Positions 1 through 49,760 of a stretch of DNA of 64,000 bases are shown here, in pieces. The notes under the pieces were generated by a model. It had not been told where the DNA came from. It saw only the letters and a program-made list of their open reading frames with translations, and did not search any database. The DNA lies in NCBI GenBank assembly GCA_038087875.1, contig JAXLNO010005841.1:3844001-3908000 (forward strand). The letters are read 5' to 3'. Made by a program: the position numbers and the translations under genes. The DNA is from Malacoraja senta (lineage: Eukaryota). Every line of letters starts with the position of its first letter. The first letter of the stretch is position 1.

Positions 1-3000
1 CCGAAGCTGGAAGAAGCTAGCTTTTACCACGGGATTGACTTGTTTGACAAATTTCAACGCTGAGTCAAATATCACGCCAAGGTTGTTGACGTGAGATTTG
101 AGTAATGGGGTAAGGCTTACAAGGCTGCCTGCTATCGTTTTGATTGAGTCCGAGGGGCCGAGAAGGATGACCTCAGACCTACTCTCGTTTAAATGGAGGA
201 AGGACTGGGCCATCCAGCACTTTATATCCTCGAGGCAGTGGATAAGATTAGGTAGATTTGATCGGTTGTTGGGCTTCAGGGGGAGTTAGAGTTGTGTATC
301 GCCTGCATAGCTGTGGAAGGACATGCCGTGCCTTTCAGTGACTTGGCTTCCACAGCATTCGTGAATTAGGCCTGTGTCCATGTTGGCTAACTCGATGGAT
401 CGATGCCAAATGCAAAATAGCTCGAAAAGCAGAAATATTTGTATTACAAGACCTATCAGAGCCAGTTTCAAGAACAGGGTGTTTGCTTGCAAACCTGGCG
501 GGGCACAGCTGCACAGGAGGAGTGTATCCAAGAAATGGGCCAAGTGAACAAATGCCTGTTGCAGCGGCGTTCATGACGCACGCACGGATACCAATTGATC
601 AACGTTCAGGACCAAGAGGGAAAGTTTCAAGGATGTTAAAATAAAGGAATATTGGATGGGAACTAATACATTTACCAAAATGGTAACAAAATGAAGGTTT
701 GGCAAGATGAATTCAGACAGGAACTTTGAGGATTGTAAACAAAGTCGGAAATCACTCATGTTGGACGTAAAAAGAGCATAAGGAACGTCGTGAACAGTCA
801 TTACCAAGTCAAAGTAAAGGAAATCCTAAGGCATATTATACACATATTAAGAATCAACTGGGTAACTGGGAAGAGGTTATAATTTCTCCATATTAAAGGT
901 GGGAACATTTGCTCGGAGTCCGAAGATGTAGGCCAGCGACGAAACCACTACTTTGCTTCGACATTCACCAAGGAGAAGGTCAGCGGGATCAAAGGGGGGA
1001 ATATTATTATGTCATGCTAATTGAGATCAAGGAGGAGGTGGAAGTGTACTTCTTGAAGAGCATTAAGTTGGATAAGTCAAATGGGCCTGATCGGACGTAT
1101 CTCGGATAACATGAAAAGGCGGGAGAGAGTAGGTTGCTGGGTCTTGGTCAATAGACATGAAATAGACAGGACGATAGATGACTTTCTGTGGAGTGATTGA
1201 TGAGTGGTAGTTTATTTTAATTTGGTATTGACCGGTATCTAACAGATGTATTGAAAAGTGTTTTGTTGCCTGCTAACCAGTCATCGAAATGCCTATACAT
1301 GATTACAATGAAGCTGTACACAGTGCACAGATACAGGATAAAGAGTTTAGGATTTAATTCAAGTAAAATCCGAATGAAGATAGGCAAAGGTGTCCAATGA
1401 GGTAGATGGGAGGTCAGGAACGCACTATAGCTGGTGAGATGATGGTTCCGTAGATTCATAACACCTGTGAAGAAACTGTCCCTGAATCTGGATGTTTGCG
1501 TTTTCTAACATGTGTACCTCTTGTCTGATGGAAATGAATTGTGTGATACCGGTCCACGATTAAGCTAGTGACCATGCCGATGCAGCGTGAAATGTAGCTG
1601 GAGTCGATTGAAGGGAGTTTGTTTGGCGTGATGGTCAGGGCTACGTCCACAATTCTCTGCAATTCCTAGCAGTCTTGCATGCAGCTGTTCCTCAAACATT
1701 TTGCGATGCACACCGAGCAGTTGCTTTCTACGGCGCATCTGTGTGTGTTTTAGTGGTATGATGGGAACATGCAGAACTTACTAAACCTTCTATAACAAAA
1801 TAGTGGCGATGTTATGATTTATTGGGCATTACTTCACTGTGGCTGGTCCAAGACAAATTGCTGGTAATATTTAATCCTAACAATTTTTATTCTCAATTCA
1901 TTTTAACTTATTGTCAAGTGTGCCACGGTACAGTGAAAATATTGTCTTGCGTGCTATCCCGTCAGCATAAACTCAATACATGATTACATGCGAGTCATTT
2001 AGTTTGTATATACATGATAAGGGGATAATGTTTAGTGCATGGTTAAGCCAGCAAAGCCCGATAAAGAATAGTACGAGGGACACCAAAGAGGTAGGTAGCA
2101 GTTCAGTACTTCTCTCTCTTTGTGGGGGATAATTCAGTTTTCTGAGAACAGCTGGGAAGAACTTGTCCCTGAAACTGTAAATGTGCGTTTGCACACTTCT
2201 TTATGTTTTGCCTCATCAGAATGGCGGACGAGGGAGTGTCCAGAGTGCGACTCGTTCTTGATTATGCTGCTGGTCTTGCCGAGGAAGCGTGGGTATAAAT
2301 GGAGTCAATCGAAGGGAGGTTGGTTTGTGTGATGGTCTGGGCTGCGCCCACAATTTTCTGTATTGTTTTGCGGTCTTGGGTTCCCAAACCGTAGTGATAT
2401 ATCGCGATACAATGATGTCTATGTTGCACATGTAGAAATTGGTGAGACTTGTTGGGGACATGCCGAATTTCCGATGCCTTCTAAGGAATTAGATGCGTTT
2501 GGTGTGCTTTCTTGGTCGTTGCTTCAATATGGGTGATCCAGGAGAATTTGTTGGTGATATTGACTCCTTGGTATTTGAAGTGTTCATTCATCTCTACGTC
2601 GGCACCGACAATGTAATCTGGGGTACTTCTTTACTTCCTGAAGGTCATAATCTCATTTGTCTTGCTGACATTGAGAGAAAGGGTGTTGTCTCGACACCAG
2701 GACGCGAGTTCTCAGTCTCCTTCCTGTACTATGTCGCATCATTATTTGATATCCTGCCCACAATGGTGGTGTCGGCCGCGAAGTTGAAAATTGAGTTAGA
2801 TTAGTACATGGATGCATAATCGTGGGTGTACGAGGAGTAAAGAAGGGGGCTCAGAAACCATCCTTGCGGAGTGCCCGTGTTGATGATTGTCGAAGAGGAT
2901 GATTTCCCCCTGATCTTTACTCATTGGGGTCATTTGGTCAGGAAGTCGAGGGTCCAGTTGCAGAGAACAGGACTGACACCAAAACTTCCGAGTTTGGCGA

Positions 3001-3715
3001 TAGCCTTGGATGGTATAATGGTATTAAAGGCAGAGGCACAGTGTGTGAATACATGTCTGAATTAGGTATCGCTCTTATCCAGGTGTTATAGGGATGAGTG
3101 TCGGGCTAGAGCGGTATTATCGTCCATGGACTTATTGTGGCGGCAGGCGAACTGCAGTGGGTCAAGGCCGCTGGTAAGACTAGATTTAAGGCGTTCCATA
3201 ACTAGCTTCTCAAAACATTTCACTATGATAAATGTCAAGGTGACTGGAGGGTAGTCGTTTAGGGATGAGATTTAGCTTTTCTTCAGCATTGTTATCATGG
3301 TGGTCTTCTTGAAGCAGGTGGGTAGTGAGAACGGTGATGGGAGAGATGAACGATGTCCGCTGGGTGGTTTGCACTGTTACTAAGTACACGGCCAGGAAAT
3401 ACATCTGGGCCAGTTGCTTTTCGTGGGTTTACCCTCAGGAAGGCCGATCGAACGCCTGCTACAATCATTCTGGGGAGGGGCACATTGTAGTCTAACGTGT
3501 CAGGTGATCACTTGGCCTTCTGCTCGAAGCGAGCATAGAAAGCTTAGGATCGCACTATCGCCAATGATGATACCTGGCCTTGCATTGCAGCCAATTATCA
3601 TATTCAGACCTTGCCACATTATCCGTGTGTCCGAGTGATTACACTAGGACTCAGGTTTGTCCCGGTATTGCCTCTTGGCATCCTTGATGGCTACGCGGAG
3701 ATCAAAGCGGGCCTC
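1..3715. repeat. Copy 1 of a near-identical segmental duplication (LINE fragments); left end runs off the window
   Basis: Matches 6913-10627 at a constant offset of 6912; ORF track duplicated (98/7010, 286/7198, 3414/10326); under about 20 substitutions seen by eye. Confidence 0.97.
2040..3715 (-). mobile_element. Rex1/Babar-type LINE RT fragment (copy at about 8950-10627, continuing at 10790-11150)
   Basis: Peptides RVNPRKATGPDVFPGRVL, FRDKFFPAVLRKLN, MIDFRK...VYIYGGEV and FRDSAANLNEYNNAVTDF. Confidence 0.8.
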
Positions 3716-6235: not shown

Positions 6236-7480
6236 AGTCGTCAAGTCGTCACTTTTATTTCTATAGCACATTTAATAAACAACTCTCGTTGACCAAAGTG
6301 CTTTACATTGGTGGAGTTACTAACGTTATACAACAGTGGTTCATGGATTTAATACACACATAAATACATACATATAGCCCTCCCTCAGAAGACGTCAAGA
6401 ATGGCTTGAGAGTAAAGATGAGTTTTAAGTCTCGAATTAAAAGAGTCGATGGAGGGGGAAGTTCTGATGGGAAGAGGGATGCTGTTTCATAGTCTAGGAG
6501 CTGCAACTGCAAAGGCGCGGTCGCGCCTGAGCTTAAGCCTAGACCGCGGGATGGTCAGTAACCCCAAGTCGGCCGATCTGAGGGACCTGGAGGTGGTGTG
6601 GTGGGTAAGCAGACTTTTGATGTAGGTTAGGGCAAGCCCGTTAAGGGCTTTGTAAACATAAAGAAGGATCTTGAAATATATTCGGAACCGCAAAGGGAGC
6701 CAGTGGAGAGAGGACAGAATCGAGTGGCGTGGTCCCTTTTTCGGGTTCCCGTCAGGAGTCTCGCTGCGGCGTTTTGGACCAGTTGCAGGCAGGACAGGGA
6801 AGATTGGCTGATGCCAGTGTAAAGGGAGTTGCAGCAATCGAGGCGGGAGGAGATAAATGTGTGGATGATCTTTTCGAGGTCGTCAAATTGGAGGAATTAT
6901 TCTAACTATCGTCCGAAGCTGGAAGAATCTAGCTTTTACCACGGGATTGACTTGTTTGACAAATTTCAACGCTGAGTCAAATATCACGCCAAGGTTGTTG
7001 ACGTGAGATTTGAGTAATGGGGTAAGGCTTACAAGGCTGCCTGCTATCGTTTTGATTGAGTCCGAGGGGCCGAGAAGGATGACCTCAGACCTACTCTCGT
7101 TTAAATGGAGGAAGGACTGGGCCATCCAGCACTTTATATCCTCGAGGCAGTGGATAAGATTAAGTAGATTTGATCGGTTGTTGGGCTTCAGGGGGAGTTA
7201 GAGTTGTGTATCGCCTGCATAGCTGTGGAAGGACATGCCGTGCCTTTCAATGACTTGGCTTCCACAGCATTCGTGAATTAGGCCTGTGTCCATGTTGGCT
7301 AACTCGATGGATCGATGCCAAATGCAAAATAGCTCGAAAAGCAGAAATATTTGTATTACAAGACCTATCAGAGCCAGTTTCAAGAACAGGGTGTTTGCTT
7401 GCAAACCTGGCGGGGCACAGCTGCACAGGAGGAGTGTATCCAAGAAATGGGCCAAGTGAACAAATGCCTGTTGCAGCGGC
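6236..7480 (-). mobile_element. L2-clade LINE, degenerate 3' ORF2 fragment (also partly at 1-570)
   Basis: Minus-strand peptides LHWLPLRFRIYFKILLYVYKALNGLA...DRAFAVAAPRL, NNLGVIFDSALKF and HSYAGDTQL (YADD relic). Confidence 0.9.
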
Positions 7481-10400
7481 GTTCATGACGCACGCACGGA
7501 TACCAATTGATCAACGTTCAGGACCAAGAGGGAAAGTTTCAAGGATGTTAAAATAAAGGAATATTGGATGGGAACTAATACATTTACCAAAATGGTAACA
7601 AAATGAAGGTTTGGCAAGATGAATTCAGACAGGAACTTTGAGGATTGTAAACAAAGTCGGAAATCACTCATGTTGGACGTAAAAAGAGCATAAGGAACGT
7701 CGTGAACAGTCATTACCAAGTCAAAGTAAAGGAAATCCTAAGGCATATTATACACATATTAAGAATCAACTGGGTAACTGGGAAGAGGTTATAATTTCTC
7801 CAGATTAAAGGTGGGAACATTTGCTCGGAGTCCGAAGATGTAGGCCAGCGACGAAACCACTACTTTGCTTCGACATTCACCAAGGAGAAGGTCAGCGGGA
7901 TCAAAGGGGGGAATATTATTATGTCATGCTAATTGAGATCAAGGAGGAGGTGGAAGTGTACTTCTTGAAGAGCATTAAGTTGGATAAGTCAAATGGGCCT
8001 GATCGGACGTATCTCGGATAACATGAAAAGGCGGGAGAGAGTAGGTTGCTGGGTCTTGGTCAATAGACAGGAAATAGACAGGACGATAGATGACTTTCTG
8101 TGGAGTGATTGATGAGTGGTAGTTTATTTTAATTTGGTATTGACCGGTATCTAACAGATGTATTGAAAAGTGTTTTGTTGCCTGCTAACCAGTCATCGAA
8201 ATGCCTATACATGATTACAATGAAGCTGTACACAGTGCACAGATACAGGATAAAGAGTTTAGGATTTAATTCAAGTAAAATCCGAATGAAGATAGGCAAA
8301 GGTGTCCAATGAGGTAGATGGGAGGTCAGGAACGCACTATAGCTGGTGAGATGATGGTTCCGTAGATTCATAACACCTGTGAAGAAACTGTCCCTGAATC
8401 TGGATGTTTGCGTTTTCTAACATGTGTACCTCTTGTCTGATGGAAATGAATTGTGTGATACCGGTCCACGATTAAGCTAGTGACCATGCCGATGCAGCGT
8501 GAAATGTAGCTGGAGTCGATTGAAGGGAGTTTGTTTGGCGTGATGGTCAGGGCTACGTCCACAATTCTCTGCAATTCCTAGCAGTCTTGCATGCAGCTGT
8601 TCCTCAAACATTTTGCGATGCACACCGAGCAGTTGCTTTCTACGGCGCATCTGTGTGTGTTTTAGTGGTATGATGGGAACATGCAGAACTTACTAAACCT
8701 TCTATAACAAAATAGTGGCGATGTTATGATTTATTGGGCATTACTTCACTGTGGCTGGTCCAAGACAAATTGCTGGTAATATTTAATCCTAACAATTTTT
8801 ATTCTCAATTCATTTTAACTTATTGTCAAGTGTGCCACGGTACAGTGAAAATATTGTCTTGCGTGCTATCCCGTCAGCATAAACTCAATACATGATTACA
8901 TGCGAGTCATTTAGTTTGTATATACATGATAAGGGGATAATGTTTAGTGCATGGTTAAGCCAGCAAAGCCCGATAAAGAATAGTACGAGGGACACCAAAG
9001 AGGTAGGTAGCAGTTCAGTACTTCTCTCTCTTTGTGGGGGATAATTCAGTTTTCTGAGAACAGCTGGGAAGAACTTGTCCCTGAAACTGTAAATGTGCGT
9101 TTGCACACTTCTTTATGTTTTGCCTCATCAGAATGGCGGACGAGGGAGTGGCCAGAGTGCGACTCGTTCTTGATTATGCTGCTGGTCTTGCCGAGGAAGC
9201 GTGGGTATAAATGGAGTCAATCGAAGGGAGGTTGGTTTGTGTGATGGTCTGGGCTGCGCCCACAATTTTCTGTATTGTTTTGCGGTCTTGGGTTCCCAAA
9301 CCGTAGTGATATATCGCGATACAATGATGTCTATGTTGCACATGTAGAAATTGGTGAGACTTGTTGGGGACATGCCGAATTTCCGATGCCTTCTAAGGAA
9401 TTAGATGCGTTTGGTGTGCTTTCTTGGTCGTTGCTTCAATATGGGTGATCCAGGAGAATTTGTTGGTGATATTGACTCCTTGGTATTTGAAGTGTTCATT
9501 CATCTCTACGTCGGCACCGACAATGTAATCTGGGGTACTTCTTTACTTCCTGAAGGTCATAATCTCATTTGTCTTGCTGACATTGAGAGAAAGGGTGTGG
9601 TCTCGACACCAGGACGCGAGTTCTCAGTCTCCTTCCTGTACTATGTCGCATCATTATTTGATATCCTGCCCACAATGGTGGTGTCGGCCGCGAAGTTGAA
9701 AATTGAGTTAGATTTGTACATGGATGCATAATCGTGGGTGTACGAGGAGTAAAGAAGGGGGCTCAGAAACCATCCTTGCGGAGTGCCGGTGTTGATGATT
9801 GTCGAAGAGGATGATTTCCCCCTGATCTTTACTCATTGGGGTCTGTTGGTCAGGAAGTCGAGGGTCCAGTTGCAGAGAACAGGACTGACACCAAAACTTC
9901 CGAGTTTGGCGATAGCCTTGGATGGTATAATGGTATTAAAGGCAGAGGCACAGTGTGTGAATACATGTCTGAATTAGGTATCGCTCTTATCCAGGTGTTA
10001 TAGGGATGAGTGTCGGGCTAGAGCGGTGTTATCGTCCATGGACTTATTGTGGCGGCAGGCGAACTGCAGTGGGTCAAGGCCGCTGGTAAGACTAGATTTA
10101 AGGCGTTCCATAACTAGCTTCTCAAAACATTTCACTATGATAAATGTCAAGGTGACTGGAGGGTAGTCGTTTAGGGATGAGATTTAGCTTTTCTTCAGCA
10201 TTGTTATCATGGTGGTCTTCTTGAAGCAGGTGGGTAGTGAGAACGGTGATGGGAGAGATGAAAGATGTCCGCTGGGTGGTTTGCACTGTTACTAAGTACA
10301 CGGCCAGGAAATACATCTGGGCCAGTTGCTTTTCGTGGGTTTACCCTCAGGAAGGCCGATCGAACGCCTGCTACAATCATTCTGGGGAGGGGCACATTGT

Positions 10401-10627
10401 AGTCTAACGTGTCAGGTGATCACTTGGCCTTCTGCTCGAAGCGAGCATAGAAAGCTTAGGGTCGCACTATCGCCAATGATGATACCTGGCCTTGCATTGC
10501 AGCCAATTATCATATTCAGACCTTGCCACATTATCCGTGTGTCCGAGTGATTACACTAGGACTCAGGTTTGTCCCGGTATTGTCTCTTGGCATCGTTGAT
10601 GGCTATGCGGAGATCAAAGCGGGCCTT
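6913..10627. repeat. Copy 2 of the segmental duplication
   Basis: Same alignment as above; similarity stops after gatcaaagcgggcct. Confidence 0.97.
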
Positions 10628-11834
10628 TATGTCCCGCTAGGGATCCTTTGACATTTTCGCAGAAAACCGGACCTTAACCTGTGAATGTACCTCACGATCG
10701 GCACAAGAAGCTGAGGTTACTCAGCGGGTCAGACAGCACCCCTGGGGAAAAGGAATAGGCGACGTTTCATGTCCAGACCTTTCTTCGGAACTCGCGGTTC
10801 ATCCGTGGTTTCCGGATGGGGAAGACTTTTATTTACTTCGACGGCGCACAGCCGCACACGCACTCGCTGGTGAAATCAGTCACGGCATTGTTGTACTCAT
10901 TCAGGTTCGCTGCGGAATCCCTGAATATGAACCTGGGGAACTTAGATGGAGATAGGGTGAACTTTAAATTTTCGATCATATGTACTTCGCCGCCATAAAT
11001 GTATACCGTGCTCGCGGTGTCTGTATTTCTTTGCTTCCTGAAGTCAATCACAATATCCTTTGTCTTTGGTGACGTTGAGTGAGGGGTTGTTGGCTGTGCA
11101 CCAGGTTACGAGGTTCCCAATCTATCTCAGCATGGTTTGATTGCACTCATGTGTGGTCTATTTTAGTATAGTTTAGTTTAAGGATACAGCGCGGATACAG
11201 GCCCTTCGGGCCACCGAGTCGGCACCGATCATAAATCCTCGCACAATAAAACAAGTCTACGCACACGAGGGACAATTCTAAACTCATACCAAGTTTAAAA
11301 AAAAGCAATCAAATTAACCTGCAAACCTGTAAGTCTTTGGAGTGTGTGAGGAAACCGAAGATCTGGGAGAAAACCCTCCAGGTCATGGGAAGAACGTGCA
11401 AACTCCGTACAGACAGCACCCGGAGTCAGGATGGAACCCGGGTCCCTGTCGCTGAAAAAGCTGTAAGGCGGCAACTCTACCGATGCGCCACCGTGCCGCA
11501 ACTCTACAAGGATAGGACGCAAACAAATGTATCTCTGTATCTCGGCACACGCGACAGCAATAGCTAATATGAATGTATTAATACGTTTATTGGCTAAGTA
11601 TTCACATAAAAGGAACTTGCCTTGTTGCTCCGCCCACAAGTGACAACATGACATACAGTGAAAGTTAAGAATGAAACATTAATAATAAAACATTATTGAT
11701 TAAACATGTGAAGTAAATCAAATACCAGAGCGAAAGAAGGCAACAGATTTTTGGTTATTGAGTAGAGCTACTACTCGTGGAAAAAAACTGTTTATATGTC
11801 TGGCTGTGACAGCTTTGATAGTCAGGAGTCGCTC

Positions 11835-12821
11835 CTAAGCCTGGCCGCCCATGCTTGCAGGCGGAATTACTCCATCGTCAGCCAGCAGGGAAGTGTTCCA
11901 TTTGCAACATAATTTGTGTAGCGCATCGCGAAGCTTGCATACACCGAACACGATGACCATGGGATTCAAAACTGCGTAGCAGAAGGCATCGTAAAGATAC
12001 GAAAACTCAAACAACTTCTCCATCATCAATGAACATTGCGATGATTGGGATATGGCACACAACAAAAATATAATTCTCGCAAAGATAAAGGCAAGAAAAA
12101 GCAGATAAAGTGAAACAACCATTGCTATTATGCGCAAGTGATGATCCCCCCTCTTAGGACGTTTAACGTTGGGGGCGAGCTGCTGAGACGATCGCCGATG
12201 TCTCCATAAGACGGAGATGAGGTAAATACAAGAAGTGGACATCCATAGAGAGGGGAGCGCAGTTGCAAGGATTAGGCTCATGTAGATGTTTAATTCTTCA
12301 GTTGCTTCGGGGTTCATTTCCTGCGACCCGTTTGTCCATCCAAAATGATAAGATCCGTTCTGGTAATGGCAGGTTAACGCTGCATTGTCCATGTAGCAAT
12401 CCAACGCTCCCAGAGCGCAGCTGAACAACGCCGTCGCACCGACCCAGAGGAAAACCTTGCCGCTGATCACTTGGGCTAGTTTCCTGGCGTTGGGCCGATG
12501 GACACTAACGATTTTCAGGCAGTAGAAGAAACAGAGGAGAGCGCTGACCCAAAAGCTGAGGGAATGGGAGAGCGCGAGGAAGGACATGGCGACCTTTTGC
12601 TGGATCTCGCAGTAGTTGTGAATGAAGTCCACGACCATTGTGAACACCGCCACGAGGATGGTGGTAACATTGGCGACGGCCAGAGCGCTGACGATGACCT
12701 CCGCGGGAGGCGCGATGACTTGACCCAACCCTCGCCACAAAGTCAGGAGGATGAAGACGTTGGTAATCAATCCGAAAATGCTGAAGAATCCGACAACAGC
12801 TGACTTCACCCACAATTCCAT
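11835..12821 (-). CDS. T2R (bitter taste)-type 7TM receptor, T2R/V1R superfamily, intact single coding exon, 328 aa
   Basis: Seven hydrophobic segments; T2R motifs GLITNVFI (TM1), SLSFWVSALLCFFYCLKI (TM3), LISVLWRH (TM5), IVFGVCKLRDAL (TM7/helix 8); no DRY/NPxxY; acceptor tttatttctacag 4 nt before the ATG. Confidence 0.85.
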   Translation of the reverse strand: MELWVKSAVVGFFSIFGLITNVFILLTLWRGLGQVIAPPAEVIVSALAVANVTTILVAVFTMVVDFIHNYCEIQQKVAMSFLALSHSLSFWVSALLCFFYCLKIVSVHRPNARKLAQVISGKVFLWVGATALFSCALGALDCYMDNAALTCHYQNGSYHFGWTNGSQEMNPEATEELNIYMSLILATALPSLWMSTSCIYLISVLWRHRRSSQQLAPNVKRPKRGDHHLRIIAMVVSLYLLFLAFIFARIIFLLCAISQSSQCSLMMEKLFEFSYLYDAFCYAVLNPMVIVFGVCKLRDALHKLCCKWNTSLLADDGVIPPASMGGQA

Positions 12822-13039
12822 TTTCCTGTAGAAATAAATTTAACCAAGGCTATAATAGATCGTTGCGTGCCCAGAAAATCTCACGTTATTGAAAACCACA
12901 TTGCAAAAACAATTGTGTCTGTTTCAAATATTTGTTAACAGCTCGAAATATTAAGGCTAGCAATATCAAAGTTATAATTCTTGCAGGATTTCGAAATGCG
13001 AAGGACATTTTAATAGCCATAATTTTATGGTTATTACTG

Positions 13040-13500
13040 CGTTCTCACAATGCCTAATGCTAGGTTACATCGTTTAATAGAGTATCGTTGCGCAAATGTC
13101 CCTAAACAAATCCTGTACTCTCAATTGAAGGAAGGTCAGCGAGCCCCCTGCAGGCAAAAGAAACGCTTCAAGGACAACATCAAGAACAGTCTGAAGAAAT
13201 TCCAAACCACATCGAGCAACTGGGAGCACATTGCACTGGACAGGCGCTCCTGTAGGAAATCTGTGCTGGAAGGAGCTGCACGTCATGAAATGGAACTACG
13301 CCGTGTCGCAAAGACAAAGCGACAGCACCGTAAGGACAGAGAGAAGGGGCATCAACGACCACCAACCACCGCCAGTCTCCACTGCCCACGTTGCACCGTG
13401 TGTGGATTGCGGATCGGCCTCTGCAGGCATCTGCAGACCCTCAAGTAGACGACACTATGGAGGGGAGAGGACAGTCATGCTCGTTTAGAATGATCGCCGA
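13040..13500 (+). mobile_element. RTE (BovB-like) LINE 3' end
   Basis: PKQILYSQLKEGQRAPCRQKKRFKDNIKNSLK...W.HIALDRR...CPRCTVCGLRIGLCRH. Confidence 0.88.
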
Positions 13501-20869: not shown

Positions 20870-21335
20870 GGATGGAGAAGAAAGGGGAGGGGTGACAGAA
20901 ACTGGGAGAGTGGGTGAAGGTGCCGGAGTTGAAGGGATTACAGAGACGCGGTGATCGGTGTGGGGGGGCTGCGGGGTGGGGGTTACAGAGGCGGGAAGAT
21001 GGGGTGTAGGGGCCGAGGGGAGCGGTGTTACCGAGACGGGGACAGTGGAGTAGGGGCCGGAGGGGAGGAAGTTACAGAGACGGGGGGGGGAGGGGGTGTA
21101 GCGACCGGAGGGGACGGGGTTACCTAGAAGGGGAGAGGGGGTGTAGGGGCCAGAGCGTTGGGGGTTACAGAGACGGGGAGAGGGTGTAGGGGCCGAAGGG
21201 GAGGTGGTTACTGGGACGGTGAGCGGGGGTGTAGGGGAGGGGAGGGCGTTACAGGGACCTGGAGCCGGTGTGACGGGGAGCGGAGGGTGTTACAGAGACG
21301 GGGCGACGGGGTGTAGGAGCCGAAGGGGTGGGGGT
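20870..21335. repeat. G-rich minisatellite (about 35-40 bp, GGGGTTACAGAGACGGGGAGAGGGGGTGTAGGGGCCGGA); also 21840-22020, 26690-27000, 29480-29670, inverted at 27190-27290
   Basis: Repeated gttacagagacgggg and gtgtaggggcc cores. Confidence 0.85.
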
Positions 21336-21433
21336 CACTCTAACTAACTAAATTATACTCATTTTGTTGATAGTTTCCCATTTGTACAGAGAGTGGGAGG
21401 CGGAGACCTGGCGCGGCCGTCGGGGACACGGGC

Positions 21434-21583
21434 TCAGTTTGTCGCGATGGTGCTCTCGATCCAGGAGACGTAGTTGCAGACGCCAGTGTAGACGCCGCGA
21501 TCGCCCCACGCGATACATCCGTAACTCCACGACATCACTGCCTGGAGCACTCTGTTACAAACCTCTGGCCCGCCAGCATTACC
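21434..21583 (-). pseudogene. Trypsinogen-like gene B, last exon (exon 5)
   Basis: cag|[49 protein letters not shown]; 150 bp; GDSGGP altered to GNAGGP. Confidence 0.9.
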
Positions 21584-22144
21584 CTGTCACAAGGGCAGAT
21601 GTGAGTGGAGGTTAATTGGATTCGGTAAAGATTGTAAGTTGTCCCCAGTGTGTGTGTGCGTGTAGGATAGTGCATGTACGAATCGTCTCGACGGCAGCGA
21701 CTCGGTGGGCCGAATGGCCTGTTTCCGCGCTGTATCTCCAAACGAAACCAGTGTGTGAACGGGTGATCGTAGCTCGGCAGCGACTCGGTGGGCCGAATGG
21801 CCCGTTTCCGCGCTCTAGTTGGGGGCGAGGGGGGGGGAGGGAAGGGGAGGTGATGGGAGGTGGTTACAGAGACGGGAGAGAGGGTAAAGGGACCGGAAGG
21901 TAGAGAGTTGAAGAGACGGGCAGCGGCGGTGTAGGGGCCGGAAGGGAGGGGGTTACACATACGGGGAGAGGGGGTGTAGGGGCCGGAGGCGAGCGGTTTA
22001 CATAGACGGTGAAAGGGGTGGGGCGGGAGGGGAGCGCAGGGGACGGGGGGAGAAGAGGGGAGGAGGAGATGTGTGGGGAGGGGAGCGGAGGGGAGGGAGG
22101 GGAGGGGAGGGGAGCGAAGAGGAGGGGGAGCGGGAGGTCTGTAT

Positions 22145-22284
22145 CTGGCAGGGGTGACTGCCTCTGTCGCCGAGGCACAACACTTTGTCAGTAATCCATC
22201 TCTGTCCAGAACCACGACAGTCCGCGTCATTCCGAATCGGAGCGTCAAAGCGCTGACGCTAGTGGCTGCAAAACGATATTCGCC
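22145..22284 (-). pseudogene. Trypsinogen-like gene B, exon 4 (degenerate)
   Basis: FDAPIRNDADCRGSGQRWITDKVLCLGDRGSHPCQ; in-frame TAG upstream; donor is AT rather than GT; 5' boundary uncertain. Confidence 0.8.
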
Positions 22285-23094
22285 CTACTCTCTCTCTCCC
22301 TCTCTCTCACCCCCTCTCTTCCCCTCTATTGTGCCCCTTCCTTCTCTCCCTCTCTCCCTCTTTCCCCCTCTCTCTTCCTCCTCTCTTTCCCTTCTCTATC
22401 CCCTTCTCTCCCGCTTCCATCTCTTCTCCTCACTCCCCTGTTCCACCTCGTCTCTCACCCTCTCTCTCCCCCCCCTCTCCCTCTCCTCGCTCCTTCCTTT
22501 CTACCCACCCACCCCCATCTCTGCCACTCTTCCCCCTCTCATCTTCTCCTTCTACCGCCCTCTCCCAATCGCTCTCTCACTCCCTCCTTCCCACCTCTCG
22601 TCTTCCTCCTGACACTCTCTCTCCCATCCCTATCTCCCTTCCCCTCTCCCCTTTTTTCTGCACTCTCTATCTCTCCACCAACCCCCTCTCCCTCTCGTCC
22701 CTCTCCCTGCCCATCCCTTCATAGCGCTGCGGTGTAAGCTCCCCAGAAAAATATGAGGTGCCGTTCCTCCAATGTGTGCTGGGCCTCACTCTGACAATGG
22801 AGGAGGCCCAGGACAGAAGGTCAAATTGGGAATGAAAGGGGGAGTTGAAGAGCTGAGGGACCGGGAGTCAGGTAGGACTGAGCGGAGGTATTCTTATCGT
22901 ATTAGTTTAATGCTTGAGTTTAGAGTTTGTGTTTTGTTTAAATTAATTTTATTTCATTTGTGTTTCAGTTAAGTTTTGTCTCTGTAATCGCCTCCCCACC
23001 CTATCTTTTCCCCCCTTCCTCCCCTGCCTCCCCAACCTCCCACCACCCTTTCCTCTCCACCCTTCCTCCCTCTCCCCATATTCTCTCGCTAGTC

Positions 23095-23195
23095 ACGCCC
23101 TCCCTCCCTCCCTCCCTCCCTCCGTCCCTCCCTCCCTCCCTCCCTCCCTCCCTCCCTCCCTCCCTCCCTCCGTCCCTCCCAACTTCCCTCCCCGA
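23095..23195. repeat. (CCCT)n microsatellite within long polypyrimidine tracts (22290-23940)
   Basis: Direct reading. Confidence 0.95.
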
Positions 23196-23207
23196 CCTCG
23201 CACAGCG

Positions 23208-23335
23208 GTATACAAGGGCTTGAAAGAGCACAGGTGCGGCCGCTCGCGAAAGGCATCGGCGCCCCGACCCCACACAACCCTTCTGCTCTTCGTCTTCCTC
23301 CGACTCGGACTCCCCCCGGGTTCCAACCTACACCC
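23208..23335 (+). pseudogene. Inverted, decayed copy of trypsinogen promoter/exon 1
   Basis: Aligns to the reverse complement of about 30115-30253 (gtatac..ggct.gaaa.agcac..gtgc.gccgctcgc...gcgccccgacccca); ATG and donor deleted. Confidence 0.8.
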
Positions 23336-24059
23336 TTCACCCCTTTATTTCCCTCCCCGTTTCTCTTCCCCCTTCCTCTGTCTACCCATCCTGTCCCCGG
23401 CCCTCTCCCTCTCCTCCTCTATCACCCTCCTCTCTCTCCCATTCTCTCCCTCCCCTTATCTCCCCCTTCTTTATCTATCCCCACTATTTTTCACCCACTA
23501 TCTCCTCTCCCCCTCTATCTCCCATTGTCTCCCTCTCCCCTTCTCCCTCTACTACCTCCCCTAATCTCTCTACACCTCTTTCTCCCCTCCCCCTCTTTCT
23601 GTCCCCCATCCCTCTCTCCACCTCTTGTCTCAACCCCTCCGCTCCCCCCCTCCTCTCTCACCCTCCCCTCTCCCCTCCTTCTTTCCCCTTTCTCTACCTC
23701 GCTTCTCGCTCTCTTCACCATCCCCGTCTCACCCCCCCCCCCCCGTTGTCAGTGACCTCTTTCCGTCTCTGCAACCCCCTCCTCCCCCGGCCCTTACACT
23801 CCCTCTTCCCGTCTCTGTAATATTCTCCTCTCCCTCTCCTCTCCCCCTCCTCTCACCCTCCTCTCCCCCTCCACTCCCCCTCCCATCCTCTCCTCTCCTC
23901 ACCTCTCCCCTTCCCTCGCCTTCTCCCCCCTCGGTACCCCCTTCAGCGCTGAAACAGGCCTTTCGACCCATCGAGTGGGTATCGAATTTGAGCTCATAGT
24001 TCATAGTTTGAGTTTAGAGTGTGAAGACAAATGTAGGTCCTTCTTCTGTCGTATGTCCT

Positions 24060-26219: not shown

Positions 26220-27034
26220 CTACCACAAGGCAGACCGTGAGAGGAAGTTAATTAGTCATAGAGGGATACCGCGTGGAAAAAGGCCCTTCGGCCCAACGTG
26301 CCCACACCGGGCAACATGCCCCATCTACACTAGTCCCACCTGGCCGCGTTTGGCGCATATCCCTCCAAACCGGCCCTGTCAAGGTACCTGTCTAAATGTA
26401 TCTTAAACGGTGGGATGGTCGCTGCCTCAACTACCTCATCCGGCCAGCTCGTTCCATACACCCAGCACCCTCTGTGTGGAAAAGTTACCCCTCAGGTTCC
26501 TATTAAATCCTCCCCCCTGCACCTTGAACTTATGTCCCCTGGTCCTCGATTCCCGTACTCTGGCAAGAGAATCTGTGCGCCTACCCGATCTAAGCTCTCC
26601 CTATAGCTCACACCCTCTGGTCCTGGCAACACTTTGGTGGGCCGAAGGACCTGTTTCCGCGGTCGGGTGAACGAGAGGGGAGAAAGAAAGGGAAGGGGAG
26701 AGAGTTACAGAGACGGGAGAGGGGGCGTAGGGGCAGGAGGGCTGGTGGTTACAGAGACGGGGGAGGGGGTGTAGGTGCGGAGGTGTGGTGGTTACAGAGA
26801 CGTGGGGGGCGGGTGGTTTGTAGGGGCCGGACAGGGGAGGGGGGTACATAGACGTGGAGAAGCGGTGTGGGGGCCGTAGGGGAGGTGGGTGCAGAGACGT
26901 GGGGAGGGGATATATGGGCCGTAGAGGAGGGGGGTACAGAGACGGGTGGATGGGATATACGGGCCGTAGAGCAGGGGGTTACTGAGACGGGGAGCGGAGG
27001 ATTTGACAGCGACGCGGAGAGAGGGGGGCTGTAC

Positions 27035-27168
27035 CTGGCAGGAGTCGCGCCCTCCCTCCTTGTAGTCGACACACATCATGTTGTAAGTGATCATTCCCGG
27101 GTAGGTGCCATGACAGTCCACTTCACTCATAACCGGGGCGTCCAAACACTGAAGGTCGCCGCGGAACG
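27035..27168 (-). pseudogene. Trypsinogen pseudogene A, exon 4
   Basis: [44 protein letters not shown]|gt; AG/GT boundaries; phases 1 and 0; Asp189 retained. Confidence 0.93.
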
Positions 27169-27413
27169 CTTGTGGGGTAAATGTGAGAGAAACCCTCTCC
27201 CCGTTTCCGTAACCCCCTACCCTACGGTCACTACACCTCCTCTCCCCATCTCTGTAACCCCCTCCCCTACGGTCACTACACCTCCTCTCCCCAATCTTTC
27301 CTTCTTTCTCACCTTCCTTTCCCATTCTCTGTTCCTTCCCTTCCCCTCCCCTCCCTCACTCTTCACTTCCTCTCCTCAAATTCTCTATCTCTCTCCTCTT
27401 CTCGCCTCCACCC

Positions 27414-36300: not shown

Positions 36301-36482
36301 CAATGGATCATGTGCACCCAAATAAGACTATTTTGTCTGGGCATAAGGTTCGGTGCAAATATTCTGGGCGAATGGGGCTGTCCCTGTGTTATAAAATTCT
36401 ATGTTTTTATGGTAATTCTGGCTATTTCAGGACATCCGCTGTGGATATGTTTTGATACTAACCCCTCGTGTTTCTCTTGCAG

Positions 36483-37396
36483 TTAATTTAGTGGCGATTG
36501 TGATCCTGTCCCGAGGAAACTGCGGCCTGTCCAAATGTATCAGCCGGTATCTCCTGTCTATGGCGGTGACGGATCTTTTGGTCATTCTCACTGCAGTGAT
36601 GCTAAACCGGATACCCGCCATTTATTTTCCGGGTAGCTTCCTCGCCATAACTCCCATATGTAGTTTCAGCATTGCGTTGATTTATGCAGCGAGAGACAGT
36701 TCGGTGTGGCTGACAGTCACGTTCACATTTGATCGATTTGTAGCCATCTGTTGCCAGAAGCTCAAAGCAAGATATTGCACCCACAGAACAGCGGGCATTG
36801 TTGTCTCAACCGTCTGTGCGTTGGGCTGTCTGATCAATGTTCCCTGGTACTTCCTGCACGAACCCATCTATATCATTGACAATGTCCCTTGGTATTGCAA
36901 ACGGAGGGATATCCGTTATTCTTTCCTTTTGTGGACAATATTTGATTGGGTTGATCGCGTTTTAACCCCTTGTCTCCCCTTCATTCTTGTCATCGTGTTC
37001 AATGCACTAACCGTCCGGTACATACTGGTGGCCAGTCGAGCACGGAAGAGACTCCGTTCTTGCTCCACCGGTGAGAAACTGAGCGACCCGGAAATTGAAC
37101 ACCGCAGCAAGTCCATTATCCTCCTTTTTGCCATCTCAGGCTGTTTCATCCTGCTGTGGATGCCGTATGTTATCCAATTCTTTGTAGAAAGGTTTCAAGT
37201 TGGTTATAAAATTAATGGCTACAGTGACCCCAGGTTTATATTGATGGAAAGTGCTAATGTGTTTCAATTGTTGAGCTGCTGCACAAACACGTTCATTTAT
37301 GCAGTTACACAAAATAAATTCAGGGAGCAGGTGAAGGCAATAGTGAAATATCCATTCAACCAATTGCATTCGTTAATTAATTTCCGTAAGTTATAA
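36483..37396 (+). CDS. GPR139-like class A GPCR, main (second) coding exon; first exon not located
   Basis: tttctcttgcag acceptor; NLVAIVILSRGNCGLSKCISRYLLSMAVTDLL, FDRFVAICC, CCTNTFIY; open to TAA; AATAAA at 37455-37460. Confidence 0.88.
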
Positions 37397-40151: not shown

Positions 40152-42627
40152 TAATAGTTAAAACTCCCGACAACACCATATGTCAGGCGTTAGAAATGTT
40201 AATGAACGAAACTCTTGACGTATACATGGGAATATTGGAGGGAACCGAACAATAAACTGGAATGGCAATGCGGGCTTCGACGTTACATTGACAGGTAGGG
40301 TTGAGGAGAATCACTCAGTTTTCTGTAGAAGTAAGAGTATACATAGAATGAATAGGTCGGAGAAACATAGATAATAGGTGCAGGAGGAGGCCATTTGGCC
40401 CTTGGAGCCAGAACAGCATCAGTCTATGAAAGTAAGCATGCAGGTACACCAGGCAGTGAAGAAAGCGAATGGCATGTTGGCCTTTATAACAAGAGGAATC
40501 GAATATAGTTGCAAAGAGGTCATTCTGCAGTTGTACAGAGCCCTAGTGAGACCACACCTGGAGTATTGTGTGCAGCTTTGGTCCCCTAATGTGAGGAAGG
40601 ACATTCTTGCCATTGAGGGAGTGCGGCGTAGGTTTACAAGGTTAATTCCCGGGATGGCGGTACTGTCATATGCTCAGAGGATGGAGCAGCTGGGCTTGTA
40701 CACTCTGGAGTTTAGAAGGATGAGAGGAGATCTCATTTAAACACATATGATTGTTAAGGGCTTGGACACAGGAGAGGCAGGAAACATGTTCCCGATGTTG
40801 GGGGAAGTTCAGAACCTGGGGCCATCTGTTTAAGAATAAGGAGTAAGCCATTTAGAACGGAGACGAGGAAACACTTTTTCCTCACAGAGAGTGGTGAGTC
40901 TATGGAATTCTCTGCCTCGGAGGGCGGTGGAGGCAGGTGCGCTGGATGCTTTCAAGAGAGATCTAGATAGGGCTCTTAAAAATGGCGGAGTCAGGGGATA
41001 TTGGTAGAAGGCAGGAAGGGGGTACAGATTGTGGATGATCAGCCTTGATCACATTGAATGGCGGTGCTGGCTCGAAGGGCCGAATGGCCTTCTCCTGCAA
41101 CTATTGTCTATTGTCTATTGTCCACCAATTCAGCTTCGTCCCCTCCGTATCGTGGGGCTTTAATCGACCCGTTCGCGGGTCCTGTCATCACCCGGCGCGG
41201 GTTAAAACCGGCCGCGGGCCTTCCATCCTCCGGCGGGGGCTTCAACATCGGGAAGCAGCAATTTTACCGCGAGGTGGTGGAAGATCCCGCGGCCGATTTT
41301 AAGCAGCGCCGCTCCGGGCGATGAAAGGCCCCGCGAACGGGCCGATACAAGCTCCGCTCTATGATCTGTGCTCTACCAGGACGTCTCCCTCCTCCAATCA
41401 CCGCGCTCCATCCTCAGTCCCACCCCCCTACTTCCGCATCTGACCGACACCTATCTCCTCCAATCACCGTACTCTATCCTCATTCCCACCCCCTACTTCC
41501 GCATCCGATCGACACCTCCGTCTTCCAATCATTGCGCTGAATCTTCATGTCCCGCCCCCCCATAGCCTGTAGTCCGACGTCTCTCTCGTCCAATCGCCGC
41601 ACTCGATCATCAGTCCCACTCCCACTGTCTCGCGGAAAGCGGAGATCTTTAATAGTTTTTTTTCACCGAATTTCGAAATCCGGATTACAAAACATGGAAG
41701 GGGGGGGGGGGTGGATTGTCCCCACCTCTCAAAACATGGAGGGGACGTGTGCCTCCGCCCCCCCCCGGGATTTCCGCCCATGCAGGGATGTGCAGACGCG
41801 AGAAGTTCACATGCGGAAACATCCCAGTAAGTAGGAGAATAAAGGCCAGCCATGCTTGTAGACATACCACCGATTGAGCTCAAACAAGTGGACGACCTCG
41901 GCCGGCCTCACATGACACTGGTTAGCATAATTGATACCACCTTCGCCCAGGGGAGAAGTGGAGCATTATGTGATCGCTACCCTCCAAGTGAGTTACTTGT
42001 GAACATTCAGAATTATGGGGGTAGTTAGCAGAAACGATTGAAATTCACCAACTCTACCCCGAAGACCGACGTGTGTTGGTTAAAGCTAAAATCCCAAGGG
42101 ATATGAGTGTCAATATGGCCCAGCGGAAATTCGGGATAATCTCTTGACGACTAGCGAGGATCCTGGCAATGAGGACAGATACCTTTGTATAAAGGAGTTA
42201 GTGTGACAGCGCCCAGGGCGGTGACGGGTAGTGGGAGGGGGATGGGCAGGTAATTGCCCGGAGTTGGGAACTGCTCGTCTCCTTGTCACCGCGTGGGTTT
42301 CCATGTTTGCTCCTGGGGGAAATTGTCGGTAATGTGAAGGAAATAGGCGTAAACGTGAGATAACATATAACTAGCGTGAAAGAACAATTGATGGTCCATT
42401 GAACCTCGGTGGGCTAAAGGGCCTGCTTCCCCGCTGTAGCCATAAACTAAACGGAACAAACTGAACTGANNNNNNNNNNNNNNNNNNNNNNNNNNNNNNN
42501 NNNNNNNNNNNNNNNNNNNNNNNNNNNNNNNNNNNNNNNNNNNNNNNNNNNNNNNNNNNNNNNNNNNNNNNNNNNNNNNNNNNNNNNNNNNNNNNNNNNN
42601 CTAAACTAAATTCATCCCTTCCCGCAG

Positions 42628-48030: not shown

Positions 48031-49760
48031 AGGCAGTGACTAGTGTGGTACTACTCCAGAATCTAAGGAGTTTTGAAAAATTATCAAATGCATCCACTAT
48101 TTCTGGGGCGACTTCCGTAAGTACTCTGGGATGCAGCCTATCTGGCCCTGGGGATTTATCGGAATTTAATCCATTCAATTTACCTAACACCACTTCCCGG
48201 CTAACCTGGATTTCACTCAGTTCCTCTATCTCATTTGGCCCGCGGTCCCCTGCTATTTCTGGCAGATTATTTATGTCTTCCTCAGTGAAGACAGAACCAA
48301 AGCAGTTCTTAAATTGGTCTGCCATGTCCTTGTTCCCCATGATCAATTCACCTGTTTCTGACTGCAAGCGATCTACATTTGTTTTAACTAATCCTTTTCT
48401 CTTCACATATCTATAAAAACCTTTGCAGTCAATTTTTATGTTCCCTGCCAGTTTTCTTTCATAATCCATTTTCCCTTTCCTAATTAAGCCCTTTGTCCTC
48501 CTCTGCTGGACTCTGAATTTCTCCCAGTCCTCTGGTAGGCTGCTTTTTCGGGCTAATTTGTACGCTTCATCTTTTGTTTTGATACCATCCCTGATTTCCC
48601 TTGTTATCCACGGATGCACTACCTTCCCTGATTTATTCTTTTGTCAAACTGGGATGAACAATTGTTGTAGTTCATCCATGCAATCTTTAAATGCCTTCCA
48701 TTGCATATCCACCGTCAACCCTCTAAGAATCAATTGCCAGTCTATCTTGGCCAATTCACGTCTCATACCCTCAAAGTTACCTTTGTTTAAGTTCAGAACC
48801 CTTGTTTCAGAATTAGCAATGTCACTCTCCATCCTAATTAAGAACTCAACAATATTATGGTCACTCTTGCCCAAGGAGCCACGCACAACAAGACTGCTAA
48901 CTAACCCTTCCTCATTTCACAATACCCAGTCTAGAATAGCCTGCTCTCTCGTTGGTTCCTCTGCATGTTGGTATAGAAAACTATCCCGCATACATTCCAA
49001 GAAATCCTCTTCCTCAGCACCCCTGCCAATTTGATTCACCCTATCTATATGTAGATTGAAGTCACCCATTATAACTGTTTTACCTTTGTTGCACGCATTT
49101 CTAATTTCCTGTTTGATGACATCCCCAACTCCTGTTAGGTGGCCTGTACACAACACCCACTAGCGTTTTCTGCCCCTTAGTGTTTCGCAGCTCTACCAAT
49201 ATCGATTCCACATCCCCCAAGCTAATGTCTTTCCTTTCCATTGCGTTAATCTCCTCTCTAACCAGCAACGCTACCCCACCTCCTTTTCCTTTCTGTCTAT
49301 CCCTCCTGAATATTGAATATCCCTGGATGTTCAGCTCCCAGCCTTGGTCACCCTGGAGCCATGTCTCCGTGATCCCAACTATATCATACTCATTAATAGC
49401 TATCTGCACATTCAACTCATCCACCTTATTACGAATGCTCCTTGTATTGAGACACAAAGCCTCCAGGCTTGTTTTTACAACGCTCTTACCCCTTATACAA
49501 TTACGTTGAAAAGTAGCCCTTTTTGATTTTTGCCCTGGATTTGTCTGCCTGCACTTTTACTTTTCACCTTGCTACCTATTGCTTCTACCCTCATTTTACA
49601 CCCCTCTGTTTCTCTGCTCACACATTTACGAAACCCACCAACTCTTATTCTCTGTTTATTATTTTGTTCTTCTTTCACCCCTACATGTTGGGTCTGAGTG
49701 CTTCCCTTCTCTGCCTCGTGCCTCACACACTGTCTACTAGCTTTCTCTATTTGAGTCCCT
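48031..49760 (-). mobile_element. CR1 LINE 5' ORF2 (APE endonuclease) fragment, opposite orientation
   Basis: CLNTRSIRNKVDEL...GITETWL, IMGDFNLH, SDHN, DKSPGPDRLHPRVL. Confidence 0.92.

What the first reader, a model, noticed from the sequence alone, without database searches (positions are those of the whole stretch)
11835..12821. Intact bitter-taste-type receptor with a mosaic of T2R and V1R motifs
Seen: TM3 (SFWVSALLCFFYCLKI), TM5 (LISVLWRH) and helix 8 (FGVCKLRDAL) are T2R-like, while TM2 (ALAVAN) and TM7 (CYAVLNPMVIV) look more like V1R/ORA. Established: T2R and V1R are sister families, and cartilaginous fishes were only recently reported to have T2R, as roughly one gene per genome. Inference: this is either that T2R1 ortholog or a separate deep-branching lineage near the T2R/V1R split, which would be new.
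Basis: partly seen in the sequence, partly recalled or inferred. Interest (0 to 1): 0.72.

Follow-up and report, generated by a model that had tools for sequence, protein, structure and literature searches.

The report
Intact skate bitter-taste receptor T2R1 gene
This is an intact gene for T2R1, the one ancient bitter-taste receptor type already known from sharks and a sawfish; the kind is ordinary, but it sits in a skate, where the gene was reported dead, and it may be one of three copies.

Summary
The ORF is real: 328 codons on the minus strand (11835-12821), single exon, good start context, in-frame stop 7 codons upstream. It matches Pfam TAS2R over its full length (E 2e-17) and gives no V1R hit. 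It is 65-67% identical to the published sawfish T2R1 and 47% to the functionally characterised catshark T2R1. Everything else found among 1.84 billion representatives is a bony-vertebrate T2R at 24-29%.

ML trees place it in a fully supported chondrichthyan T2R1 clade. The "V1R-like" TM2 and TM7 motifs are shared with sawfish and catshark T2R1 and occur in lungfish, coelacanth and gar T2Rs. So there is no mosaic and no new deep lineage.

dN/dS against sawfish is 0.21, with no rate acceleration, so the gene looks functional.

The twist is the host. Repeats match little-skate DNA at 89-97%, so the genome is a skate. Published surveys report T2R1 as a pseudogene or absent in skates and as never duplicated in cartilaginous fish.

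The scan found this before on other DNA of the same scaffold: two more intact 987-nt T2R-like ORFs lie about 87 and 289 kb away, and another agent has confirmed the nearer one. I could not fetch them, so the copy number is untested here.

The parts
11835..12821 (-). Complete single-exon coding sequence of T2R1 (328 codons plus a TAG stop at 11835-11837)
   Evidence: ORF list; Pfam TAS2R E 2.2e-17 over the full length; 65% identity to Pristis pectinata T2R1 and 47% to Scyliorhinus canicula T2R1; AlphaFold2 model with 7 TM helices plus helix 8, pLDDT 83.6, pTM 0.83
12816..12842 (-). Start context: ATG at 12819-12821 within gaaaATGG (A at -3, G at +4), an in-frame TAA 7 codons upstream (12840-12842), and a polypyrimidine-cag just upstream that looks like a splice acceptor for a 5'UTR intron (the acceptor is inferred only)
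   Evidence: Sequence read directly
12510..12557 (-). TM3 / start of ICL2 with the family-wide W91, L96, C97, F99-Y100-C101-x-K103-I104 block, which stands where class A receptors have DRY
   Evidence: Invariant or at least 90% conserved columns across 22 T2Rs; alignment columns
12351..12359 (-). N155-G-S sequon in the ECL2 beta-hairpin, a candidate N-glycosylation site
   Evidence: N155 is at least 90% conserved across the 22 T2Rs; hairpin strands at residues 149-154 and 157-162 in the model
12198..12221 (-). TM5 cytoplasmic end, LISVLWRH, carrying the family-wide L205 and H208
11919..11981 (-). TM7 (CYAVLNPMVIV, with N286-P287 in the columns where this alignment's majority consensus has no fixed residue, just before the conserved I-L-I-x-G-N-x-K-L stretch) and helix 8 (FGVCKLRDAL, with the conserved K-L-R)
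   Evidence: Shared with Pristis (YAVLNPVIIV) and, as N-A, with Scyliorhinus; Pro or Asn at the same columns in several bony T2Rs
11586..11591 (-). First canonical AATAAA downstream of the stop codon (244 nt away); a candidate polyadenylation signal (inferred)
   Evidence: Pattern search; sequence

Best explanation
Window 11835-12821 (minus strand) encodes an intact member of the chondrichthyan T2R1 clade, the single ancient bitter-taste receptor lineage of sharks and rays, in a skate genome. It is most likely a working class T (TAS2R) G-protein-coupled receptor. It has seven helices and a short extracellular N-terminus, with a ligand pocket formed by the extracellular halves of the helices and capped by an ECL2 beta-hairpin. 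By analogy with the tested catshark and bamboo-shark orthologues, it would be expressed in oral taste cells, bind xenobiotic bitter compounds and bile acids or steroids, and signal through a gustducin-type G protein. What is shown here: family membership, clade membership, intactness and long-term purifying selection. What is inferred: expression, ligands, G-protein coupling, and whether it is a 1:1 orthologue or one of several skate co-orthologues.
For: The ORF is intact with a good start context and an upstream in-frame stop. Pfam TAS2R scores 63.6 bits over the full length, with no V1R hit. The best hits are the published Pristis T2R1 (XP_051864870, 65%) and S. canicula T2R1 (XP_038632475, 47%). 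In an exhaustive phmmer search of 1.84e9 representatives, all other significant hits are TAS2R-family proteins at 24-29% identity, apart from one low-complexity artefact, and the named ones come from lungfish, coelacanth, gar, bowfin, a caecilian and chicken. The ML tree gives a 100/100 clade with Pristis and Scyliorhinus. With a class-A root, that clade scores 98/100 inside a 100/100 T2R clade. All 13 invariant or near-invariant T2R columns are retained. dN/dS against Pristis is 0.21 at dS 1.13. The Tajima relative-rate test gives 23 versus 20 unique changes, p 0.65, so the skate lineage shows no relaxation. A neutral ORF of this size has only a 1.6% chance of avoiding a stop after 0.1 substitutions per site. 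The AF2 model is confident (pLDDT 83.6), and its best structural matches are TAS2R14, TAS2R4 and TAS2R46; 26 of the top 30 AFDB Swiss-Prot matches are T2Rs. Ligands and taste-tissue expression of the shark orthologues are from PMC10691231.
Against: There is no expression or ligand data for this gene. Published surveys report T2R1 as a pseudogene in two skates (PMC10691231) and zero complete T2Rs in Amblyraja radiata (PMC10869828 supplement), so a very recent loss of function, for example regulatory, cannot be excluded. Branching order inside the clade is unresolved: the free tree weakly (87/86) puts Pristis with Scyliorhinus, and the AU test does not reject window+Pristis (p 0.23). Synteny with the Pristis locus could not be shown, because only the CDS aligns. 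A transposon-derived ORF lies only about 230 bp upstream of the start codon, so the promoter is not obvious.
Confidence: 0.85

Rival explanations
1. It represents a separate, deep-branching receptor lineage near the T2R/V1R split, or a V1R/ORA-type receptor, as the motif 'mosaic' suggested.
For: N286-P287 in TM7 recalls the class A/V1R-type NP. Four V1Rs appear among the top 30 AFDB Swiss-Prot structural matches.
Against: It is 65-67% identical to a published T2R1 and lies in a 100/100 clade with two published T2R1s. Pfam V1R gives no hit at E<=10. No V1R/ORA appears among the significant hits in 1.84e9 representatives. The NP and LAVAN motifs are shared with T2R1 orthologues and occur in bony T2Rs.
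Confidence: 0.02
2. It is a T2R1 gene that has recently lost function (silenced, or relaxed very recently) and keeps an open frame only by chance, in line with the reported pseudogenisation of T2R1 in skates.
For: Two skates are reported with pseudogenes (PMC10691231) and Amblyraja has 0 complete T2Rs. No T2R protein is annotated in Leucoraja, Amblyraja or Rhinoraja in the protein collection. A TE fragment lies directly upstream.
Against: The protein evolved at the same rate as the intact sawfish gene (23 vs 20 unique changes). All family-wide conserved residues are kept. dN/dS is 0.21. The chance of staying open falls to 13% at 0.05 and 1.6% at 0.1 neutral substitutions per site. A second copy about 87 kb away is also reported intact, which is unlikely for decaying genes.
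Confidence: 0.1
3. It is not the 1:1 orthologue of sawfish T2R1 but a paralogue from a duplication, either skate-specific or older, in a small T2R1 cluster.
For: Scan notes report two more intact 987-nt T2R-like ORFs on the same scaffold, and another agent confirmed one of them as T2R1. The free ML tree places the window copy outside Pristis+Scyliorhinus, though weakly (87/86). There is a 99.5% identical 3.7-kb duplication 1.2 kb from the gene, so the region does duplicate.
Against: Pairwise identities (67, 47 and 48%) and equal rates fit the species tree with plain orthology. The AU test does not reject window+Pristis. The other copies could not be read here, and false duplication in the assembly is possible. 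All published surveys find 0-1 copy.
Confidence: 0.5

Closest known systems
Chondrichthyan T2R1 (Behrens, Lang & Korsching 2023, PMC10691231): Pristis pectinata XP_051864870 and Scyliorhinus canicula XP_038632475 (scT2R1)
   Same: It has the same length class (328 vs 332 and 345 aa) and a single exon. 130 positions are identical in all three proteins. The three share the TM2 LA[VL]AN and TM3 SFW..LCFFYCLKIVSVHRP blocks, the ECL2 Cys and NG[ST]YHF hairpin, and the TM7/H8 G[VI]CKLRD block. The clade has 100/100 support.
   Different: The host is a skate, a group in which the gene was reported as a pseudogene. It is possibly one of three copies, whereas T2R1 was described as singular and never duplicated. 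The C-terminal tail differs. It keeps H208, where the sawfish has N.
Bony-vertebrate TAS2R / class T GPCRs (Pfam PF05296; solved structures TAS2R46 7xp6, TAS2R14 8xql, TAS2R4 9m8l)
   Same: The Pfam model matches over its full length. The conserved TM3 FYCxKI, TM5 LxxxLxxH, ECL2 Asn and H8 KL(R/K) are present. The fold's best matches are TAS2R structures.
   Different: Identity is only 19-24% in the alignment (24-29% by phmmer). It has N-P in the TM7 columns where most bony T2Rs carry other residues. It also has a clade-specific set of extracellular cysteines (C142, C151, C263) found in 0-1 of 19 bony T2Rs.
V1R / ORA olfactory receptors (Pfam PF03402)
   Same: They are the sister family of T2Rs, have a similar size and fold, and are intronless. 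A few V1Rs appear among the structural matches.
   Different: There is no Pfam V1R hit and no V1R/ORA among the significant sequence hits. The protein is not a member.

Membership tests
TAS2R / class T GPCR | Matches the curated family profile (Pfam PF05296) above its gathering score over most of its length | tested here: met
   63.6 bits vs cut-off 22.2; residues 9-306 on profile positions 12-300 of 303
TAS2R / class T GPCR | About 300-aa intronless CDS encoding seven TM helices plus helix 8, with a very short N-terminus | tested here: met
   Single ORF of 328 codons; AF2 helices at 2-32, 39-67, 72-106, 110-146, 171-214, 225-257 and 261-293, with H8 at 295-313
TAS2R / class T GPCR | Family-wide conserved residues (TM3 W..L..FYCxKI in place of DRY, TM5 L...H, TM6 L, H8 KL) and the ECL2 Asn sequon | tested here: met
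   W91, L96, C97, F99, Y100, C101, I104, N155, P190, L205, H208, L238 and L297 are all present
TAS2R / class T GPCR | Monophyletic with known T2Rs in a phylogenetic tree | tested here: met
   100/100 T2R clade against class A GPCRs. ORA/V1R outgroup sequences could not be obtained, so that particular outgroup was not used.
TAS2R / class T GPCR | Activated by bitter compounds; expressed in taste receptor cells | not testable with these tools
   Shown only for the catshark and bamboo-shark orthologues (PMC10691231)
Chondrichthyan T2R1 clade | Groups with published chondrichthyan T2R1 sequences to the exclusion of all bony-vertebrate T2Rs | tested here: met
   100/100 and 98/100; 67% and 47% identity vs at most 29% to any other protein
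Chondrichthyan T2R1 clade | Gene tree follows the species tree (a batoid copy should be sister to the sawfish copy) | tested here: inconclusive
   The free tree gives Pristis+Scyliorhinus at 87/86. The AU test does not reject window+Pristis (p 0.23). Pairwise identities and equal rates fit the species tree.
Chondrichthyan T2R1 clade | Single copy per genome ('singular', never duplicated) | not testable with these tools
   There is no second copy within the 64-kb window. Scan notes report two more intact copies 75,282 and 276,719 nt before the window start, one confirmed by another agent. Their sequences could not be fetched.
Chondrichthyan T2R1 clade | Conserved synteny with the sawfish or shark locus | tested here: inconclusive
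   Only the CDS (75% nt identity) and dispersed repeats align with the 21-kb Pristis locus, and no neighbouring genes are called there.
V1R / ORA | Matches the V1R profile (Pfam PF03402) or has V1R/ORA proteins as its nearest relatives | tested here: not met
   No V1R hit at E<=10; none of the 21 significant representatives is a V1R

The most novel reading that the evidence does not exclude
Skates, far from losing T2R1, carry a small tandem cluster of two or three intact T2R1 genes spread over about 290 kb. This would be the first duplication of the bitter receptor reported in any cartilaginous fish. It would overturn both 'singular, never duplicated' and 'pseudogenising in skates', and it would offer a natural experiment on the first step of T2R family expansion.
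Probability: 0.5. Interest if true: 0.55.

Novelty: new member of a known kind. Interest (0 to 1): 0.4.

Why it matters
T2R1 of cartilaginous fish is treated as the closest living proxy for the ancestral vertebrate bitter receptor, because it is thought to be single-copy and never duplicated. Skates are cited as a lineage that is losing it. An intact, constrained T2R1 in a skate adds a batoid data point and suggests the earlier pseudogene calls reflect other species, other copies or older assemblies. If the two further copies on the same scaffold are real and diverged, the 'singular receptor' picture needs revising. Skates would then show the earliest stage of the birth-and-death expansion seen in bony vertebrates. 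The gene itself is otherwise an ordinary member of a described family.

Tried and rejected
(1) The protein collection holds no further chondrichthyan T2R1 proteins. A single-sequence search and a profile search both returned only Pristis and Scyliorhinus.

(2) An exact look-up of the window protein found nothing on record, so the species could not be read off.

(3) I could not obtain ORA/V1R outgroup sequences. None appeared in any search, the ESM Atlas with TAS2R excluded returned only generic class A and odorant receptor clusters at weak scores, and I did not type sequences from memory. Class A GPR139-like proteins served as the distant root instead.

(4) Catshark and manta DNA could not be fetched because the files were too large. 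This ruled out a three-taxon codon analysis, so I used a protein relative-rate test.

(5) I tried to reach a little-skate T2R1 locus by walking the GPR139-like cluster on CM054021.1. Four loci totalling about 97 kb contain no T2R sequence.

(6) The supplement of Behrens et al. and the paper by Itoigawa et al. 2024 are not held. The names of the two skates with pseudogenes, and the nature of the lesions, could not be checked.

(7) A direct PDB sequence search found nothing; only the fold search links the protein to the TAS2R structures.

(8) The weak Pfam Trypsin hit at 26795-27325 is rejected as a translated minisatellite.

(9) The notes tool would not accept coordinates outside the window.

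Full report
**1. The observation**

The window carries an uninterrupted 328-codon ORF at 11835-12821 on the minus strand. It is the longest ORF in the 64 kb.
- The ATG sits in a good context (gaaaATGG). An in-frame TAA lies seven codons upstream, and no earlier start codon is possible.
- The ORF ends in TAG, and the first AATAAA lies 244 nt downstream.

So the sequence-level observation is correct.

**2. Family assignment**

- Pfam TAS2R (PF05296) matches residues 9-306 against profile positions 12-300 of 303. The score is 63.6 bits against a gathering score of 22.2. The V1R model gives no hit even at E<=10.
- The word-index search of 5.8 billion proteins returns two relatives. One is "taste receptor type 2 member 143" of Pristis pectinata (65% identity, E 7e-129). 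The other is "taste receptor type 2 member 13-like" of Scyliorhinus canicula (47%).
- The supplement of Policarpo et al. 2024 (PMC10869828) identifies these as XP_051864870 and XP_038632475, the T2R genes that study mined from the two species. The catshark gene is the scT2R1 deorphanised by Behrens et al. 2023 (PMC10691231).
- An exhaustive phmmer search of 1.84 billion cluster representatives finds only 21 proteins at E<=1e-3. These are the sawfish cluster, one low-complexity artefact (P0003), and 19 proteins at 24-29% identity.
- All 19 are TAS2R by Pfam. Those with names come from lungfish, coelacanth, gar, bowfin, a caecilian and chicken.
- No V1R or ORA protein appears.

**3. Phylogeny**

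- An ML tree (LG+C20+F+G4, IQ-TREE) of the ORF, the two chondrichthyan T2R1 proteins and 19 bony T2Rs gives a chondrichthyan clade with 100/100 support on a 2.5-substitution branch.
- With five class A GPCRs as a distant root, the T2Rs form a 100/100 clade. The chondrichthyan clade, window ORF included, scores 98/100.
- Inside the clade the order is unresolved. The free tree weakly (87/86) joins Pristis with Scyliorhinus, and the AU test does not reject window+Pristis (p 0.23).
- Pairwise identities are 67% window-Pristis, 47% window-Scyliorhinus and 48% Pristis-Scyliorhinus. These are what the species tree predicts for a batoid gene.
- I could not obtain ORA/V1R sequences from any tool, so that outgroup was not used. 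The two reference proteins were already placed against ORAs by Behrens et al., so the placement carries over.

**4. The "mosaic"**

- Aligning the three chondrichthyan proteins shows that the supposedly V1R-like motifs belong to the T2R1 clade. TM2 reads LAVAN, LALAN and LAVAN. TM7 reads YAVLNP, YAVLNP and YAIGNA.
- In the 22-protein alignment, the TM2 Asn is common in bony T2Rs (for example LAVSN in lungfish and ITLAN in gar).
- The TM7 Pro occurs in lungfish and coelacanth T2Rs, and the TM7 Asn occurs in two other bony-vertebrate T2Rs (P0008 and P0015).
- The clade does have features of its own. These include the N-P pair and a conserved set of extracellular cysteines (C142, C151, C263) that are nearly absent from bony T2Rs. 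They are T2R1 traits, not evidence of a chimeric or intermediate lineage.

**5. Structure**

- AlphaFold2, run with the 22-sequence alignment, gives a confident model (pLDDT 83.6, pTM 0.83). It has seven helices, helix 8 and a beta-hairpin in ECL2 that carries the conserved N155-G-S sequon.
- Foldseek against the PDB ranks TAS2R14, TAS2R4 and TAS2R46 at or near the top, only marginally ahead of class A receptors.
- Against AFDB Swiss-Prot, 26 of the top 30 matches are T2Rs and 4 are V1Rs. That is expected for sister families.

**6. Is it functional?**

- A codon alignment with the sawfish gene (locus L001) gives dN 0.23, dS 1.13 and dN/dS 0.21. Identity by codon position is 78%, 81% and 55%.
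- With the catshark as reference, the skate and sawfish proteins have 23 and 20 unique changes (p 0.65). The skate lineage is therefore not evolving faster than the lineage of the intact sawfish gene.
- About 4.2% of point substitutions in this ORF would create a stop. The chance of staying open is 13% after 0.05 neutral substitutions per site and 1.6% after 0.1.
- All invariant or near-invariant T2R columns are retained.
- These results show long-term constraint and rule out all but a very recent loss of function. Expression and ligands remain inferred from the shark orthologues.

**7. Whose genome?**

- Other agents' notes call the genome a skate. I tested this.
- Four loci of the little skate Leucoraja erinacea were fetched through paralogues of a neighbouring GPCR. 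They share interspersed repeats with the window at 88-97% identity: 64 blastn matches for the first locus and 58 megablast matches overall.
- The 21-kb sawfish locus gives only eight matches at 66-82%, one of which is the T2R CDS itself at 75%.
- The genome is therefore a skate, or a very close relative of skates.
- The exact protein is not on record in the gene-position collection. The two homologue searches returned no T2R-like protein from Leucoraja, Amblyraja or Rhinoraja. So the gene is unannotated.

**8. Why that matters**

- Behrens et al. report T2R1 as intact in nine sharks and the sawfish but as a pseudogene in both skates examined. [quoted passage not shown]
- Policarpo et al. list 0 complete T2Rs for Amblyraja and at most 1 for any chondrichthyan.
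- A 2024 review gives the range as zero to one (PMC11641376).
- I found no later paper on T2R in skates or rays.
- An intact, constrained copy in a skate therefore adds to the published picture and partly corrects it.

**9. Copy number**

- Within the window there is no second T2R-like sequence.
- The scan's notes list two more intact 987-nt T2R-like ORFs on the same scaffold. They start 75,282 and 276,719 nt before the window start, that is about 87 and 289 kb from this gene.
- I could not read either sequence. I therefore cannot say whether they are diverged paralogues, very recent copies or false duplications in the assembly.
- The region does contain a 99.5% identical 3.7-kb direct duplication with a period of 6,912 nt. 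It ends 1.2 kb from the 3' end of the gene. This shows that recent duplication, or assembly redundancy, occurs here.

**10. Verdict**

The ORF is a genuine, intact and apparently functional member of the known chondrichthyan T2R1 clade. It is not a T2R/V1R mosaic and not a new deep lineage. As a kind it is already described. Its interest lies in the host, a skate, and in the possible two or three copies, which is a cheap and decisive check for whoever holds the whole scaffold.

Noticed in passing
window 1-3714 and 6913-10626: Direct duplication at 99.5% identity over 3,714 nt, with a period of 6,912 nt. It ends 1.2 kb downstream of the T2R stop codon. The first copy runs off the window start, so it may be a complete 6.9-kb tandem duplication, either a recent segmental duplication or assembly redundancy.
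   Followed up: partly
window 36452-37396 (+): Second chemoreceptor-like single-exon ORF (314 aa, Pfam 7tm_1 E 2e-19), 24 kb from the T2R. It belongs to the 'probable GPR139'-like class A family, which has more than 2,500 members in elasmobranch proteomes. It aligns from residue 20 of the Mobula hypostoma protein at 85% identity (95% positives), while the best annotated skate protein is only 74%. There is no ATG before TM1, so a short upstream first exon is expected, as in its homologues. I did not locate that exon.
   Followed up: partly
Leucoraja erinacea CM054021.1, about 44.0-45.1 Mb (loci L002-L005): The little-skate GPR139-like genes retrieved all lie within about 1 Mb near the end of one 46-Mb chromosome, often two or more per 20-30 kb. 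In Amblyraja, Rhinoraja and Hemitrygon, most or all of the listed hits likewise share a single contig. This is a large tandem receptor cluster for which I saw no description.
   Followed up: no
window 20883-22136, 26704-27293 (G-rich) and 22283-23932 (C-rich): Arrays of a roughly 45-nt G-rich minisatellite (consensus contains GTTACAGAGACGGGGAGAGGGGGTGTAGGGGC) and its C-rich counterpart. They cause the extreme GC skew swing (+0.30 to -0.49) at 20-24 kb. The weak Pfam Trypsin hit at 26795-27325 is a translation artefact of one array.
   Followed up: yes
window 13050-13448 (+): A 132-aa basic ORF that looks transposon-derived lies only about 230 bp upstream of the T2R start codon on the opposite strand. 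The T2R promoter and 5'UTR are therefore probably further away, across an intron; an acceptor-like tttctacag precedes the ATG.
   Followed up: no
window 57850-59360, 40420-41120, 60370-61135, 48046-48916: Copies of a LINE family (RVT_1 fragment at 58297-58881) match little-skate loci at 88-95% identity but the sawfish locus at only 66-68%. This is useful as a quick marker that the genome is a skate.
   Followed up: yes
T2R1 protein residues C71, C142, C151, C263 (window CDS 11835-12821): Four extracellular cysteines are invariant in skate, sawfish and catshark T2R1. C142, C151 and C263 are found in 0-1 of 19 bony T2Rs, while C71 (top of TM3) is shared with 6 basal bony-fish T2Rs. This suggests T2R1-specific disulfides, possibly including a class-A-like TM3-ECL2 bridge. 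I did not measure distances in the model.
   Followed up: partly
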